From contig OZ287748.1 of the NCBI GenBank assembly GCA_965649765.1, forward strand, positions 10,044,001-10,108,000: 64,000 nucleotides of DNA. Direction: 5' to 3'. How positions within the stretch are numbered: the first letter of the stretch is position 1; every line of letters begins with the position of its first letter. Origin of the DNA: Bispira polyomma. Lineage: Eukaryota. The notes under the pieces were generated by a model. That model was not told the DNA's origin. It was given only the letters and a program-made list of their open reading frames with translations, and searched no databases. The translations under genes were made by a program, and so were the position numbers. Positions 19,325-27,209 of this stretch are shown one piece after another.

Positions 19325-21809
19325 GGAGCCACTGCAGTAATGCAGTGGATAAGCCAGTGTTCTCAAGGACTGTATATAACTCAGAGTTCAAAGATTTTAA
19401 ATTGTGTGATAAAATGTATTTTAAACAGTATATATGTTTTAACAGAAATGTGAAAAGGACTTATAAAAATGTGGTTGTGAAAGGGAAACCGTGTATTCCC
19501 AGTGGTCTTGAGAAAGCCTCAGTGGTGGGCGAAATTGGGGGGAACAGTGTAGCAAAAAATTGTTTGGTCACAAACAATAAAAGGATCTGCACTAAAGTGA
19601 GGGACGTTACATTTGGCAAGGGGTTTAACAACAAGCATGTAAACAAAACTGTCTACTCGCCCAGACAGTCCGTCAGCAAGCAAAAAACCCACCAGAACAA
19701 AAGAAGTAGTATTGATTGTCCCCGGGGTGTCAAAAATAAATCAATGCGTGTAGAGAAACCTCTTGGTGTGGGTACTTCATTGTCCCCCTCCAAGGGGTTT
19801 ATTGCCTCGAGTGAAAACAATGGCAGTGGGTGTCAGGTTTCCCAATTACCCCTGCACAATAGATATGTTGTGTTAGAAACACCCGACGAGGAGGGGGTGA
19901 GTGTTGCTGACACGGGCTATTGTGTGCAGGCTTCCCCACGTGTGAAGACTTGTACAAAAACACCTAAACAAACAGATTTGAATAATTCTGATGACAAGTA
20001 TGCATTGGCAGTTCAAAGATCTTCTAATAAAAGACCACGTCTTAAGGACGCCAACCAATGCGACACCTTTAAATTGTGGGATATACAAAACAGTGGGAAG
20101 TTTGGCTTCATCCCCCTCGAGTCTTGGGGAAAACCCATTATAGATAAATCAAATAACCTATTGGCAATGGATGTGTTTACACTTCACAAGCATCTTAAAC
20201 TGGATGGGCGCCCTAATTATAGGGGACTCCAGGTCCCTGTGGCTTCTCAACTTAATGCCTCCGTGTGGGCTGAGTATTTGAGGGGTTATTGGGACTGGGA
20301 ACTCCCCCTGCTTGTAAAATATGGGTTTCCACTAGACTGTGTGAATGATCATGAGTTTAAGTCAGAACTTAACAACCACACCTCAGCTATTCAGTATCCG
20401 ACTCACGTGAAGCACTATTTAGAAGAAGAATGTCAGTTGGGTGCCATGTACGGGCCCTTTGAGGTGCCACCAATTTTAAAATTGCATACCTCCCCCTTCA
20501 TGACCAGGGAAAAATCAAGCTCAGTTAACCGTCGAGTGATCATTGATCTCAGCTGGCCTGAAGGCCATTCAGTTAATGCAGCTGTGTGTCCCACTTCTTA
20601 TCTAAACAAAGAATTTATGCTGACTTATCCGTCAATAGACACTATAACCTCACAAGTTATCAAAATGGGCAAAAGTTCACTGATTTTTAAAGCTGACATC
20701 AGTCGCGCTTTTAGGCATGTGCCTATGGATCCAAAAGAACTAAACTTGTTGGGGTTGTATTGGGATGGTTACTATGTGGACGGTTCGTTGCCCTTTGGGT
20801 ACAAGCATGGCTCGGCCATTTTCTAGAGGTTATCGGATGGTATCAAATATATAATGCACAAGGAAGGCCACCATATTACGAATTATATAGACGACCTCCT
20901 TTGTTGCTTGATTCCGTCAAAAATATACCATACCTATCACCGGCTTCAAGCCTTATTGGCTGAACTAGGTTTGACCTTGAGTGACAAAAAATTGGTCCTT
21001 CCGGCGACCCGGGTAACTTGTCTCGGTATCGACATAGACACGGTCAATTTAACCACCTCCATCCCAGATGAAAAATTACAAAATATCATGCCATGTGTGA
21101 CAGTTGGGCTGGTAAAAAATACTGCACAAAAAGGGAACTCCAGTGTTTACTGGGTTCACTCCTTTATGTATCTAAATATGTCAAGTACTCAAGATTTTTC
21201 TTGAATAGAATGCTTCACCTCCTCAGAAGTAATCATAAGAGCAAAAATTTCAAAATTACTCCGGATTTCCATAAAGATTTGACCTTGTTCAGAACTTTTT
21301 TGAAACAATTCAATGGTGTCTCTTTTTTCCACCATCACCCCACAACTGCCCTCATAGAACTGGATGCTTGTCTGACAGGTATGGGAAGGGGGGGGGTCTA
21401 TGGACAAAAGGTGTACGCGTTGCCTATACCTGCTCGATTACAGCATCAAAATATTGCTTCTTTGGAGATGTTAAACATTTTTGTGGCAATGAAATTATGG
21501 GGTAAGCAGTGGCAGGGTCAGAAGGTCCTCATAAAATGCGACAATCAAGCTGTGGTCAGTGTCCTTACTAATGGCAGGACAAGGGATAGTATCCTTGCCC
21601 TGTATTCACATAACATATTTATGTTAGCTAGCCATTTTGATGTAGAACTAAAAGTTATTCACATATTAGGTGACCACAATACCACTGCTGACCTGCTCTC
21701 ACGCTGGAAGGAGTCCACTGTTAACCATGTCCGTTTGCATTCTCTTGTAGGACCAGTTCAGGGGTGTCCTGTTACTGAACATCACCTGCTACTCAATGAA
21801 GACATATAA
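19321..21809 (+). pseudogene. Pol (RT + RNase H) of YR element 1, broken by a stop at 20824 and a frameshift near 21090
   Basis: YGFP, SPFMTREK, RVIIDLS, ADISRAFR, LPFG, YIDD, TCLGI; RNase H ELDAC, LEM, CDNQAVV, NTTADLLSR. Confidence 0.9.
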
Positions 21810-21848
21810 ATTGTCACTGTCTTCCTTGTAGTTTTTATTGTGTTTCAG

Positions 21849-22845
21849 ACAAAAATCCACTTCAAAAACTGTTGTATGACAATGCTGTGAGGAAACTGCA
21901 CTTAGCCTTCTGTAGGTCCACTGCTTGATCTTACAGAGCTATGTACAGGGTGTATCTGGCTTATGCTGCTTTCATGGATCGGCCTATAAATCAGGTGACT
22001 GTGTCTGATCTTCTATGTTTTTTGGAAGTTTTACAATTTAACTCTGTCAAACCTGCACACATGGCTAACTATCTGTCTGCCATCAGAGCCGAATCCATTG
22101 TGCATAATGTTCAAATACAGGCTTTCAGTGACCCTCGTGTTGCCTATTACCAAAAGGCTGTGCAAATGGCTGCCCCCCCTCAATGTTAAACTAAAAAAGG
22201 TAATAGATATCCCCACTTTGCAAAGCATTGTGAAAGTTTCGAAAAAACAACTTACATGGGGCTTGTTTTTAAAGCAGTATGTTATTGCTCAGTTATTTTT
22301 CATTTCTCAGGCTATCCAATCTTGTACCACATTCAACTGCTCAATTCTCTGCGCTAAAGCATTTAGCTAGGGCAGATGTCATGACCCACCCGGATAAAGC
22401 CGTTCTGTTGATTAAGTGGTCCAAAACAATGCAAAACAACAAGCAGATCAAACTCTTAACCATTCCTCGGTTACCGGGCTCACCATTATGCCCTGTTGGG
22501 TCACTGGAGGCCATTCTGGCCCTCACTCCATCGGGACCTAACTCACCATTGTTTCAAATTAAAGTCAATCACAAATGGGTGCCTCTAACTGACACCAGAG
22601 TGCGTCGCCACCTAAAAGATGTATTACTTAGACTAAAGTTGGAAAACTCTGGGCTTACCTTCCATGCTTTCCGTCGTTCAGGTGCCACTTTTGCTTTTAA
22701 TCATAACGTTAGCATACAAAACATACAAAATCATGGCACCTGGACTTCGGATTGCGTGTGGAGGTATGTCACAGATACTGTTGATGCTGGCCACCCAGTG
22801 GCTGATTCCTTTAGGCGTCATCTATCTGCCTCTGTCACTTCCTAA
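21849..22845 (+). pseudogene. tyrosine recombinase of YR element 1 (frameshifted)
   Basis: FLRLSN, WSKT, LCPV, HAFRRSGAT, HGTWTSDCVWRY (R-H-R-H-Y catalytic set). Confidence 0.9.
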
Positions 22846-23679: not shown

Positions 23680-24607
23680 TTGGGAGGATTGGAAGTTATC
23701 TTTAGCTATCAGGGCCATCGGGCCACTCACTCAAGTACCCAAGAAGAGGGGAAGGAAGAGGAGATGGTGACTTATGATGAGGAGGGAGATGGGGAGTTTG
23801 ATGTTGACAGACCTGAAGAGGCTCTGACTGTGGCACCGGAGATCCAGTTATCTCAGTTATCTCAGTTTACAGCCCTGCAAGACATTGAGATCCAAGATAC
23901 AGAGGGACAAGATTTAACTGGTGACGTCGAGGTCCTTTCAAGGAAGCAGAGGAAGGGGCAGATAAAGACAGTGCTACTGACCATCAAACAGGAGGAGGCT
24001 ATCATCGACTTCCTCAAGGACTATAAGTGGCTATACAACAAAGGCCACACTGGCTACAAGGACAACGAGAAGAAAAACGTGGCCTGGGAGGAGTTTTGCG
24101 GGGTCAGGGGGCTTGATGCTGGGGAAGTCAAGAAGTGGTTCCAGTCCAGTTCCCCCCCCACCCCCACTGAGTTGACGGACAGATATAGCTGGGTGAAGGA
24201 CAACTTCAAGTTCCTGCGGCCTCACATTATCTGTCAAGTGAACAGGACGGCTGGCTTTAATCCCATATCACCGGCCTCAGCTTCTGCTGGTCGTATATCC
24301 CAGACACCAAGTGTCCAAGTCTGACACAGACTAGGCTGACCGGGAGATAGAGGATTCTATGCTGTTGCCATTGCCGTTACCGGCCCGACTTTCACAACAG
24401 TCATCTACCTGATAAACTGTCGGTAATTTTGAACACCTTTAGGTAATAGGCCTTCAACCTGGTCAGCAACTTACATGGGGGTTAGATTTACCTATTTCCA
24501 GCAACAACCACGACAGCCTCATCCTCAGCCACCACAGCTCCAATCTCAGTCATCACAACAACCTCTTCCACCTCAGCACACCCCTGCCGAACAAGCCAGA
24601 CCAGTAG
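23680..24607 (+). pseudogene. Harbinger Myb/MADF-like DNA-binding protein (open to 24324; degenerate Q/P-rich tail to ~24607)
   Basis: EEAIIDFLKDYKWLYNKGHTGYKDNEKKNVAWEE...VKKWF (MADF-like) and FKFLRPHI. Confidence 0.7.
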
Positions 24608-24620
24608 GGTGTACACAACC

Positions 24621-24641
24621 AGCCCGTTTCAGGGCAACCCA
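24621..24641 (+). promoter_or_regulatory. degenerate histone-type 3' stem-loop downstream of the Harbinger Myb-like gene
   Basis: AGCCCG-TTTC-AGGGCA-ACCCA versus consensus GGCCCT-TTTC-AGGGCC-ACCCA (13/16 in the hairpin, plus the ACCCA flank). Confidence 0.6.
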
Positions 24642-24717
24642 AATGTTTTAAAAACATTATCTGAGCTGTTTGTTAAATGAAAAAACACCTCACTGCAAGA
24701 AGCAAATTTTAGAACAT

Positions 24718-24742
24718 TAGGTGGCCCTGAAAAGGGCCGATT
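24718..24742 (-). promoter_or_regulatory. canonical replication-dependent histone mRNA 3' stem-loop downstream of the Harbinger transposase
   Basis: Minus strand reads AATC-GGCCCT-TTTC-AGGGCC-ACCTA, 25 nt after the transposase TGA (24766-24764). Confidence 0.85.
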
Positions 24743-24763
24743 GATTTTTCTTGCAGCTCAGCT

Positions 24764-26158
24764 TCAGATTCTGTCGTTCTGCCATAGCACTGCCCCGTCA
24801 TTGAGAAAGTACCCCATCAGTAGCTCTTGTTGCATTGTTGACAGCAACACACCACCGAACCTCTGGACTAGTATTCCCAATGAATTCTCGACAACCCTTC
24901 TACCCCTGGAAATTCTGTAGTTGTATATGTGCTCATTAGGGTCCATCCCTTGTCTGCAGAAGGGCTTCATCTGCCAGGGCATTAGGGCAAATGCGTCATC
25001 ACCCAGAATGAAGAAGGAGATGGGGGGCCTAAAAGGGCCTATGGTTTCTGAAGCGGGGGAAGTTGATTGAGTGATTTTCTATCCTCTGTTTCAGTTTAGA
25101 TTGATTGAAGATCTGTGCATCTGAGCTGGAGCCACTGGATCCAAGGTCCACCCAGAGGAATCTGTATTCCGCTTCAACCAAAGCCAGCAAAACAATGGAG
25201 TGGAAACTCTTGTAATTGAAGTATTCGCTCCCCCATTTCCTTGGGCATCTAATTGCAACGTGTTTTCCATCTATGGAGCCCACGGCATTGGGCACATTTC
25301 ATATCTTCCGGTACTGAGCCTCCACCTTCTTCCAGCCTGGTGGAGTTCTTGGGCAAGACAAGAATTCCTACTGGTATTCATCAATGATTTCCTGGCACAT
25401 CTAGGGATCAACTTGGTTATAGTGTACTACCCCACTGCAAAGGAGGGGCTGTGGTGGCCTAGTGGTTAGCAGGCATTGCACTTCATAATCACTGGTCTCT
25501 CACCTCTGGGATCGGCTAGCGTTGGTTCGACTCCCGTCGATGCCTATTTGGGAAAGGTGGTAGTTTCTTACTGTGGGCTGCTGGTTTCAGTGCAGAACCT
25601 TGATCAACTGTATGCAGTGTTTCCTTCAGCGTTTCCAACTACCCGTCCCAATATAACCTAAACAGGTACTAGAGGGGACGTTAAATATCCCAACTCAATC
25701 ACCCACTGCAAAGGAGTAATGTAGAGAACTTTAGGTCTCCCCAGTGGCCAAATGTCTCAATGTTATGGCGATCTTCAGTCTAAGGGACAGTGTCTTCCTA
25801 AACCAGATGGCCTGCTTCTTGACCATCCCCCACCCTCCTCTCCATCTCTTGGAATGCATTAAGGGACATCCTCAGGAAGTTATGGTATAACTCCCCAATC
25901 TTGTAGTTCCAGGAATGGGAGAAGTGCAGAGTAATACAAATGCTCCTCACGTTGCTTGAGCCATGGCTTCACCCAGAATCAACGTCTGGCCCTTTCTTCT
26001 GTGACGACTTTTCCTTGACCTATATTTTCTGTGTCTGTCTCTCTTCTTAACATGTCTATTCTTCTTTGCAGATGTAAAAAATCCATCACTTGCAGTCTCA
26101 TTGAAGTCATTATAACTTGAAGTACCCTGATAATCTCTATTACTCTTTGTAGAACCAT
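24764..26158 (-). pseudogene. Harbinger (DDE_Tnp_4-type) transposase, with stops, frameshifts and a SINE insertion
   Basis: [74 protein letters not shown]. Confidence 0.9.
25446..25701 (+). mobile_element. young tRNA-derived SINE inserted in the transposase
   Basis: TGGCCTAGTGG A-box, GGTTCGACTCC B-box; 15-bp TSD CCCACTGCAAAGGAG at 25431 and 25702; closely related to 45838-46088. Confidence 0.92.
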
Positions 26159-27209
26159 CTTGACAATTAAATCTGTCTGGATTTATATATAGGGTTCATA
26201 GGTGACAAACTTTTCCACCAACCTTAATTACCAGGATTTGTCAGAATAAATGGGCGGCCTCCCCAAGTTATTGTAAATCACGCCGAGTGGATCGGGCGGC
26301 CTCCCCGAGTTATCCTAACAATCTTAAGCAGTACTACCGACTTATCTCCCCGGACCAGGGAGGTCGGGGCAGCCGTCGAGAGTATTCACATTTATAATCG
26401 CGTGACGCACATGTTTCCGCACTTTTCTTAAAAAAATCGGAGGCAAATGCTGCCACAGACAACATTTATTGCAAGAGGAAGTAGTAACCCTAAAGACGTT
26501 GTTTCATAAAAATTTAATTTGCTAATAATGCAATAAATTAAACATAATGGGGAAATATGTATGTAATATTTGTACAAATTCTAATTATATAAATATATAG
26601 GGTATACTATTTAGATATGATTTTCTCTACCAGGTCACTATAACTTTATAGAATACCTTTATAATTATTTACTTAAAACTTAATTGTGTTACCATTAAGT
26701 TATTGAGAAATATGTCTACACATGGATGACAGACTTTTAGCACAGTGTCAAAGTGGAACGTTCTTAATAATCACAAACAACATAATCATGCAAATAATTA
26801 CAATTTGAACTTTATATAAATACATGCAATATTAAAAGCTTCTATTAATGGAATTGGACACCTTATAATCGTATGTATTCATTAATAAAATCAAAATTAG
26901 GTTACCACCAACTACTTAATAATGGTAGGTTTTTAGTATTGTGTGAATTTTGTGACTCCTAATTAGTATGACCAAACGGGTGAACTTTTTATATCCACTT
27001 GACAGATTCTGTACACCCAGTTTATGCATAGAATCTGGGTGGTGTATTAAGTTATATTTTTCACTGACTAAAGGCATAAAAGAGTGAATAATTTCAACAC
27101 GTCTTGCATGCAATTTGAGACTCAGATTCTAGTTTCATAATAAAGGGGCGAATATACCTGTCCTTTTAAAATTTGTTGAAAAACTTTCAAGAAAATCTAA
27201 TCTGTAAGA

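What the first reader, a model, noticed from the sequence alone, without database searches (positions are those of the whole stretch)
24621..24655. Second, degenerate histone-type stem-loop ends the convergent Myb-like gene
On the + strand, about 14 nt after a TAG closing the Q/P-rich tail, is ACAACC-AGCCCG-TTTC-AGGGCA-ACCCA-AATGTTTTAAAA. The transposase copy is followed by ACCTA-ATGTTCTAAAA, so both share the downstream context as well. Two facing stem-loops about 85 nt apart, each in the sense orientation of its own gene, argue against chance capture of a single histone fragment. They would end both transcripts before they overlap, avoiding dsRNA.
Basis: partly seen in the sequence, partly recalled or inferred. 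Interest (0 to 1): 0.8.

Follow-up and report, generated by a model that had tools for sequence, protein, structure and literature searches.

The report
Transposon genes ending in histone stem-loops
The site is the mutated remnant of a histone-mRNA-type 3' end signal that, in this family of Harbinger DNA transposons, follows both of the element's two facing genes, which suggests that these transposons borrow the cell's histone mRNA processing machinery instead of ordinary polyadenylation.

Summary
The sequence is there as described and is not chance. A 20-base consensus with up to 3 mismatches hits the 64-kb window only at this site and at the facing transposase-side site, and hits none of 100 shuffles. 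Alone, the site is a broken hairpin: 4 base pairs, 16.1 bits against Rfam's cut-off of 34.

Homologous positions in other copies of the same PIF/Harbinger family carry a perfect stem-loop (36.7-40.1 bits) about 22 nt after the stop of the Myb/MADF-like gene. A mirror-image module sits 25 nt after the transposase stop. Both modules also carry a downstream box that matches the one behind this genome's own histone genes.

Across four Harbinger lineages of this genome, only the stem-loop (93% identity) and that box (92%) stay conserved, while the 3' UTRs have diverged to 32%. Deeply diverged elements in a second organism show the same two-gene layout, with compensatory stem changes.

The window copy is dead: both termini are missing, the reading frames are broken and the spacer is deleted. 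Processing by SLBP/U7 is inferred, not shown; no U7 gene was found and no RNA data were available. No report of this was found in the searchable literature. Other first readers of this scan noted the same motif elsewhere in this genome.

The parts
23737..26455 (.). Truncated, decayed copy of a PIF/Harbinger transposon. The Myb/MADF-like gene is on the + strand and the DDE transposase on the - strand, convergent.
   Evidence: Homology to other genomic copies begins at 23737 and ends at 26455. Other copies continue about 580 nt further on the Myb side (homology about 480 nt, then the terminal repeat at L018:295) and about 70 nt further on the transposase side, up to terminal inverted repeats flanked by TAA/TTA.
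23737..24607 (+). Remnant of the Myb/MADF-like gene. The family stop codon TAG is at 24605-24607, out of frame in this copy.
   Evidence: Pfam MADF_DNA_bdg scores 19.7 bits on ORF 23680-24324, below the cut-off, and 22.9 bits on the better copy in L022, above the cut-off of 22.
24621..24636 (+). The finding: a degenerate histone-type stem-loop with three substitutions against the family consensus (positions 1, 6 and 16). Only 4 of 6 pairs are left.
   Evidence: alignment A1.
24637..24674 (+). Downstream part of the Myb-side module: ACCCA, a 7-nt spacer, a purine-rich box at 24649-24656 (one change from the family's CAAAAACA), then a second conserved stretch at 24657-24674.
   Evidence: Aligns to the family consensus and to the sequence behind this genome's H2A, H2B, H4 and H1 genes.
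24612..24706 (+). The whole Myb-side arm of the inverted duplication.
   Evidence: In long copies the two arms share at least 95 nt.
24707..24747 (-). Transposase-side arm, cut short. It keeps a perfect stem-loop (24738-24723) plus 16 nt; the rest of the arm and the spacer (about 370-1200 bp from stem-loop to stem-loop in long copies) are deleted.
   Evidence: Rfam Histone3 34.1 bits. The junction was read from A1 and from the spacer alignment.
24764..26158 (-). Remnant of the DDE_Tnp_4 transposase gene, in ORF pieces. Its stop codon TGA is at 24766-24764.
   Evidence: Pfam DDE_Tnp_4 46.2 bits on 25029-25295 and 19.2 bits on 24764-24982. About 180 nt of coding sequence present in other copies is missing at 24825/24826.
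25446..25701 (.). A 256-bp unrelated repeat inserted into the transposase remnant.
   Evidence: It is absent at this point in other copies (L006 is contiguous there). The same sequence is found at other positions in L023, L027, L028 and L030.

Best explanation
Shown: the site is the mutated remnant of a two-part histone-type 3' end signal that belongs to the ancestral sequence of this PIF/Harbinger family. The signal is a 6-bp stem with a 4-nt loop, then ACCC, then a purine-rich box about 12 nt further on. It sits about 22 nt after the stop codon of the Myb/MADF-like gene. An inverted duplicate sits 25 nt after the transposase stop, so the two convergent genes each end in the signal in their own sense.

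Inferred: in active elements both pre-mRNAs are bound by the stem-loop binding protein and cut by the U7 snRNP just after the hairpin, as histone pre-mRNAs are. This would give non-polyadenylated messages whose amount follows histone mRNA, that is, S phase and the stockpiles of oocytes and early embryos. It would also stop the two facing transcription units before they run into each other.

For a cut-and-paste element, expression tied to DNA replication and to the germ line would favour copy gain; this last step is speculation. In this window copy the signal no longer works, and the copy is truncated and broken.
For: - Family level: 23 Myb-side and 15 transposase-side arms were found in 30 loci. 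The consensus of both is a perfect stem-loop plus the same downstream sequence.
- Myb-side arms score 36.7-40.1 bits on Rfam Histone3, against 39.5-42.9 for the genome's real H2A, H4 and H2B genes.
- The downstream box matches the one behind the host's histone genes, at the same spacing.
- Between four Harbinger lineages of this genome, identity is 0.61 in the end of the coding sequence, 0.32 in the 3' UTR, 0.93 in the stem-loop, 0.64 in the next 12 nt, 0.92 in the box and 0.63 after it.
- In 19 stem-loops from transposon lineages, a second organism and histone genes, all cells pair. Three of six pairs show changes on both sides and none shows a one-sided change.
- In four contigs of ENA assembly ERZ22147071, transposases only 38-43% identical to the query are followed by the same kind of hairpin and box (L061, L063, L065; decayed in L105). 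In L061 and L065 a convergent ORF (Pfam MADF in L065) ends in one too. At DNA level, the one element compared (L065) shares with this genome only about 100 nt of the catalytic core and the 65-nt module.
- The transposon-type 19-mer occurs 344 times, dispersed, against 0 in the reversed control. All five closely spaced pairs listed are convergent.
Against: - There are no RNA data: cleavage after the hairpin and absence of poly(A) are untested.
- No U7 snRNA gene was found, so pairing of the box with U7 could not be checked.
- The inverted arms are 95-150 nt long, longer than a histone signal needs. AATAAA-like motifs lie roughly 40-110 nt after the transposase-side hairpin in long copies, so polyadenylation further downstream is possible.
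- Copies of the family are about 80% alike and decayed, and no intact element was seen.
- Related transposases from other samples have no such hairpin.
- The stem-loops used for the covariation count were picked by hairpin or Rfam score, which inflates the paired fraction.
Confidence: 0.65

Rival explanations
1. The module is conserved but works in another way: the long inverted repeat between the two genes acts at the DNA or RNA level as a generic two-way terminator, an insulator or a cruciform needed by the element. On this reading the histone-like hairpin is only the conserved core of that palindrome, and SLBP and U7 are not involved.
For: The arms share 95-150 nt, more than the roughly 45 nt of a histone signal. 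The spacer carries 32-nt tandem units and is conserved among long copies. The palindrome is deletion-prone: the window copy and L002/L003 have different junctions.
Against: Between lineages only the hairpin and the box are conserved, not the rest of the arms. Both match the host histone genes in sequence and spacing. The hairpin always lies 20-45 nt after a stop codon, in the sense of that gene.
Confidence: 0.15
2. It is a passenger without function: an ancestor captured the 3' flank of a histone gene, the fragment was duplicated in inverted orientation, and it has been carried along since.
For: The module is clearly histone-derived. Among copies of one family the hairpin is no better kept than its flanks, 0.87-0.95 everywhere, as expected for neutral decay after insertion.
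Against: A passenger would have diverged like the neighbouring 3' UTR (0.32), yet the hairpin and the box are at 0.92-0.93 between lineages. Stem changes are compensatory. The layout persists in a second organism whose transposases are about 40% identical.
Confidence: 0.12
3. The two arms are the terminal inverted repeats of a small nested transposon that inserted between the two genes.
For: Two inverted arms around a variable spacer of about 370-1200 bp look like a miniature element.
Against: The arms begin at a fixed short distance after both stop codons in every lineage, and also in the second organism, where the spacers are unrelated. No target-site duplication is evident. The arms are homologous to histone gene flanks.
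Confidence: 0.05
4. It is a chance resemblance in this copy only.
For: The site alone scores 16.1 bits, E 0.48.
Against: None of 100 shuffles gave a match, and the positions are homologous to perfect hairpins in other copies.
Confidence: 0.01

Closest known systems
3' end signal of replication-dependent histone mRNAs (Rfam RF00032 Histone3; stem-loop bound by SLBP, downstream element paired with U7 snRNA)
   Same: Same hairpin geometry and conserved positions, the same ACCC flank, and a purine-rich box at the same spacing as behind this genome's own histone genes. The hairpin lies a few tens of nucleotides after the stop codon. Family members pass Rfam's cut-off.
   Different: The genes are a transposase and a Myb/MADF-like protein, not histones. 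The stem has C-G where this genome's histone genes have U-A at the fourth pair. The signal is part of a 95-150 nt inverted duplication. Processing has not been shown.
PIF/Harbinger superfamily of DNA transposons (DDE_Tnp_4 transposase plus a Myb/SANT-like DNA-binding protein, 3-bp TWA target duplication)
   Same: Both proteins, the terminal inverted repeats and the TAA/TTA flanks are present in the family.
   Different: From my own knowledge and five literature searches, described Harbinger elements are not reported to end their genes in histone stem-loops. Here both genes do.
U7 snRNA acting on HERV1/LTR12 elements in human cells (bioRxiv 10.1101/2023.08.25.554787; title and abstract only, found)
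   Same: It links the histone 3' processing snRNP to transposable-element sequences.
   Different: By its title that work concerns repression of retroviral LTRs and lincRNAs by U7. It does not concern a stem-loop plus box placed after the coding genes of a DNA transposon. I did not read the paper's body.

Membership tests
Histone 3' stem-loop (RF00032) | 6-bp stem and 4-nt loop scoring above Rfam's gathering score of 34 bits | tested here: not met
   The window site scores 16.1 bits and forms 4 pairs with a 6-nt loop. The homologous sites in L003, L007, L016, L017, L022, L025 and L026 score 36.7-40.1 bits. The family meets the feature; this copy does not.
Histone 3' stem-loop (RF00032) | ACCCA/ACCA flank directly after the stem | tested here: met
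   ACCCA is at 24637-24641. The family consensus is ACCC followed by A or T.
Histone 3' processing signal | Purine-rich downstream element at the right spacing, complementary to the 5' end of U7 snRNA | tested here: inconclusive
   The box at 24649-24656 aligns with the box behind host H1 (identical consensus) and behind the core histone genes H2B and H4 (one purine change; H2A has a second change). It is 0.92 conserved between transposon lineages. No U7 gene was found, so complementarity is untested.
Histone 3' processing signal | Cleavage a few nucleotides after the stem and mRNA without poly(A) | not testable with these tools
   No transcript data were available.
Histone 3' processing signal | Belongs to a replication-dependent histone gene | tested here: not met
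   The upstream genes are MADF/Myb-like and DDE_Tnp_4.
PIF/Harbinger transposon | DDE_Tnp_4 (PF13359) transposase | tested here: met
   46.2 bits in the window, and 35.6-58.3 bits in other copies and lineages.
PIF/Harbinger transposon | Second gene for a Myb/SANT-like DNA-binding protein | tested here: met
   MADF_DNA_bdg scores 22.9 bits against a cut-off of 22 in the L022 copy. The window copy scores 19.7 bits, below the cut-off. The neighbouring genes in the second organism carry PF10545.
PIF/Harbinger transposon | Terminal inverted repeats | tested here: met
   A shared terminus of more than 25 nt is seen at the transposase end in 8 distinct copies, and in inverted orientation at the Myb end of L018. 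The window copy lacks both termini.
PIF/Harbinger transposon | 3-bp TWA target-site duplication | tested here: inconclusive
   TAA or TTA directly flanks 7 of 9 distinct termini, but both ends of one and the same copy could not be fetched.

The most novel reading that the evidence does not exclude
A clade of PIF/Harbinger transposons, present in at least two animal genomes, has replaced polyadenylation by the SLBP/U7 histone pathway for both of its genes. Transposase and its DNA-binding partner would then be made only when histone mRNAs are, in S phase and in oocyte or embryo stockpiles. This would be a so far undescribed way for a DNA transposon to time its activity by hijacking a host RNA-processing pathway.
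Probability: 0.5. Interest if true: 0.85.

Novelty: new variant of a known kind. Interest (0 to 1): 0.72.

Why it matters
Outside histone genes, the histone 3' end pathway is regarded as almost unused. If a mobile element uses it for both of its genes, that would show the pathway can be borrowed. It would give a simple sequence-encoded explanation for cell-cycle or germ-line timing of transposition. It would also offer a natural test case for what the stem-loop and the downstream element need in order to work away from a histone gene.

There are practical consequences too. Such transcripts would be missed in poly(A)-selected RNA-seq, so the activity of these elements would be underestimated. 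Genome-wide scans with the Rfam model would count hundreds of transposon copies as histone signals: 344 exact dispersed hits here.

Tried and rejected
- U7 snRNA: the Rfam U7 model on the whole genome gave nothing, but only 65 of about 298,000 candidates were scored. A pattern joining an anti-box to a U7-type Sm site gave 310 hits against 232 in the control. A five-copy candidate on C2 has no terminal hairpin and no Rfam match. U7 is therefore unresolved, not shown to be absent.
- Conservation among copies of one family: the hairpin is no better kept than its flanks. This is expected for neutral decay and is uninformative about function, so lineages were compared instead.
- Terminal repeats in the window: none were found. 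The copy is truncated at both ends.
Full-length structure and same-copy target duplications are therefore untested.
- Bacterial promoter and terminator scan of the region: irrelevant hits only.
- Weak Rfam microRNA and bicoid hits over 24613-24751 merely reflect the inverted repeat.
- Literature: five successful searches found no report of transposon genes with histone stem-loops; two further queries failed on syntax.
- The organism was not identified. The large word-indexed protein search was not used because the claim does not rest on it.

Full report
**What is at the site**

The window is eukaryotic DNA (G000:C1:10044001-10108000; 1.04 Gb assembly, about 29-48% G+C in 2-kb windows). I saw no sign that it is human.

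- At 24621-24636 (+) lies a hairpin-like 16-mer followed by ACCCA.
- On the opposite strand, 86 nt away, lies a perfect hairpin at 24738-24723.
- Rfam's Histone3 model gives 34.1 bits (cut-off 34) for the minus-strand site. This is the only Rfam hit of the window at gathering level.
- The finding itself scores 16.1 bits, E 0.48. It folds into only 4 pairs with a 6-nt loop, -8.4 kcal/mol, against 6 pairs for the facing site and for a real H2A gene of this genome.
- The site is nevertheless not chance. A 20-base consensus with up to 3 mismatches matches the window only at these two places, and matches none of 100 shuffles.
- The two sites are arms of one inverted repeat.

**The genes**

- Left of the site is a Myb/MADF-like reading frame. 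It scores 19.7 bits in the window and 22.9 bits, above Pfam's cut-off, in a better copy.
- Right of it, on the minus strand, are pieces of a DDE_Tnp_4 transposase (46.2 bits). Its stop, TGA at 24766-24764, is 25 nt before the perfect hairpin.
- Together with terminal inverted repeats and TAA/TTA flanks seen in other copies, this is a PIF/Harbinger transposon.
- The window copy is a wreck. Homology to other copies runs only from 23737 to 26455, so both termini are missing.
- About 180 nt of transposase coding sequence is missing at 24825/24826, and a 256-bp foreign repeat sits at 25446-25701.

A search of the genome with 24450-24950 found over a hundred matching pieces, and 29 further loci were fetched. 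In them I found 23 Myb-side and 15 transposase-side arms.

- The consensus of both arms is the same. It has a short A/C-rich lead, a perfect 6-bp stem with loop TTTC, and ACCC. A 7-nt spacer, the box CAAAAACA and a further conserved stretch follow.
- Leaving out two segmental duplicates, 9 of 21 Myb-side arms still form all six pairs and 5 are identical to the consensus.
- Seven Myb-side arms pass Rfam's cut-off at 36.7-40.1 bits, against 39.5-42.9 for the genome's H2A, H4 and H2B genes.
- The window site differs from the consensus at stem positions 1, 6 and 16. The change at position 1 is a G-to-A in a CpG context and recurs in 7 of 21 Myb-side and 4 of 13 transposase-side arms.
- In all 12 loci where both arms of this family were found, they are convergent.

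**Reading frame**

In the family the coding frame ends in a T/S-rich tail...PNLPDQ, followed by TAG 22 nt before the hairpin. In the window an indel separates the true frame from its TAG, and 9 nt of the 3' UTR are deleted.

**The spacer**

- In long copies the two hairpins are about 370-1200 bp apart.
- The arms share 95-150 nt, and the middle of the spacer holds 32-nt tandem units.
- In the window the whole spacer and the distal part of the transposase-side arm are deleted. That arm keeps only 16 nt after its hairpin and then runs into the reverse complement of the Myb-side arm.
- L002 and L003 carry a similar deletion with a different junction, so such deletions arose more than once.

**Relation to the host's histone genes**

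- The histone-type 19-mer occurs 1726 times, in tandem arrays. These include a 4.8-kb four-hairpin repeat, apparently the four core histone genes, on C1 near 30.8 Mb.
- There is also a 1727-bp H1-like array on C4.
- The transposon-type 19-mer, which has C-G instead of U-A at the fourth pair, occurs 344 times, dispersed, against 0 in the control. The five closely spaced pairs in the list are all convergent.
- Behind H2A, H4, H2B and H1 the hairpin is followed by the same kind of box at the same distance. The core genes have CAAGAACA (H2A CAAGAAAA) and H1 has CAAAAACA. The same further stretch follows, as in the transposon.
- The transposon therefore carries the complete two-part histone signal, not just a hairpin.

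**Evidence for constraint**

Copies of one family decay evenly, which says nothing about function. Lineages do.

Transposase 3' ends of four Harbinger lineages of this genome (A is the window's family, with L020 and L024; B is L016; C is L034, L035 and L037; D is L031 and L039) were aligned. Identities between lineages are as follows:

| Region | Identity between lineages |
|---|---|
| End of the coding sequence | 0.61 |
| 3' UTR | 0.32 |
| Hairpin | 0.93 |
| Next 12 nt | 0.64 |
| Box | 0.92 |
| After the box | 0.63 |

So there are two islands of conservation, at the spacing of a histone signal, in otherwise unrelated 3' UTRs.

In 19 hairpins from these lineages, a second organism and four histone genes, every cell pairs. 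Three of six pairs change on both sides (G-C to A-U at pair 1, C-G to U-A at pairs 3 and 4), and none changes on one side only. These hairpins were chosen by Rfam score or by a hairpin filter, so the paired fraction is biased upward.

**A second organism**

A profile-free HMMER search with the C-terminal 160 residues of a same-family transposase found 5840 relatives. I fetched the contigs of eleven of them.

- Four contigs of ENA assembly ERZ22147071 (transposases 38-43% identical to the query) carry one to four tandem hairpins 20-45 nt after the stop. Those in L105 are decayed.
- In L061 and L065 the last hairpin is followed by ACC, a spacer and CAAAAACA. In L063 the sequence after it is AAG and the box is CAAAGAAC.
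- In L065 the convergent MADF gene ends ...LPQ, TAG, 25 nt, then a perfect hairpin and a CAAGAAC box.
- In L061 a facing hairpin lies about 32 nt after an unannotated 190-residue ORF; the MADF-annotated ORF lies about 850 nt further upstream on the same strand.
- A 2.5-kb stretch of L065 shares with this genome only about 100 nt of the catalytic core and the 65-nt module (82-93% identity). This is therefore another species with a deeply diverged element.
- Relatives from six other samples have no such hairpin, and one further contig (L101) did not match its query and could not be judged. The trait is thus restricted to part of the clade.

**Mechanism**

Shown: the position, sequence, orientation and conservation of a histone-type signal after both genes.

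Inferred: SLBP binding, U7-guided cleavage, messages without poly(A), coupling to S phase and to maternal stores, and a clean stop between two facing genes.

I could not find U7. AATAAA-like motifs roughly 40-110 nt after the transposase-side hairpin leave room for a downstream poly(A) site.

**Novelty**

Five full-text searches found no report of transposon genes ending in histone stem-loops. The nearest item is a preprint on U7 and LTR12 elements (10.1101/2023.08.25.554787), a different phenomenon by its title and abstract.

Other first-stage readers of this scan noted the same motif on other pieces of this genome. Those notes are unchecked and were not used as evidence.

**Verdict**

The site is a dead copy of a family-level signal. 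The broader phenomenon is well supported by sequence and is unproven at the RNA level.

Noticed in passing
window 21093-22845: Directly left of the Harbinger remnant lie ORFs with an RNase H-like domain (RVT_3, 24.5 bits) and a tyrosine recombinase (Phage_integrase, 21.2 bits, below the cut-off). This suggests a DIRS-like retroelement.
   Followed up: no
window 25446-25701: A 256-bp repeat is inserted in the transposase remnant. The same sequence sits at different positions inside other Harbinger copies (L023, L027, L028, L030), so it behaves like a small mobile element.
   Followed up: partly
G000:C4:54.70-54.81 Mb (L040-L060) and G000:C1:30.81-31.09 Mb: There is a tandem array of a 1727-bp unit with a lysine-rich H1-like gene ending in a histone stem-loop, at least 60 units long. 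A separate 4.8-kb repeat carries four stem-loops, apparently the core histone genes. The genome has 1726 exact histone-type 19-mers.
   Followed up: partly
L061:4966-5057, L063:4543-4580, L065:2990-3026: In the second organism the transposase-side hairpin is repeated in tandem, two to four times about 23 nt apart. It has A-U instead of G-C as its first pair.
   Followed up: partly
L007, L013, L018, L020, L024, L025 (spacers between the two hairpins): The long spacers contain 32-nt tandem units and form an extended imperfect palindrome. The window copy and L002/L003 have lost the centre through deletions with different junctions, which suggests that the palindrome is unstable.
   Followed up: partly
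L036:1506 and L016:2791: Further hairpins lie behind other Harbinger-derived reading frames. One follows what looks like an internally truncated transposase (L036). One has the loop TATC (L016).
   Followed up: no
Arms in L002, L011, L013, L020, L024, L028 and window 24621: The first stem base G is recurrently changed to A where it follows a C. This is the pattern expected from decay of methylated CpG.
   Followed up: no
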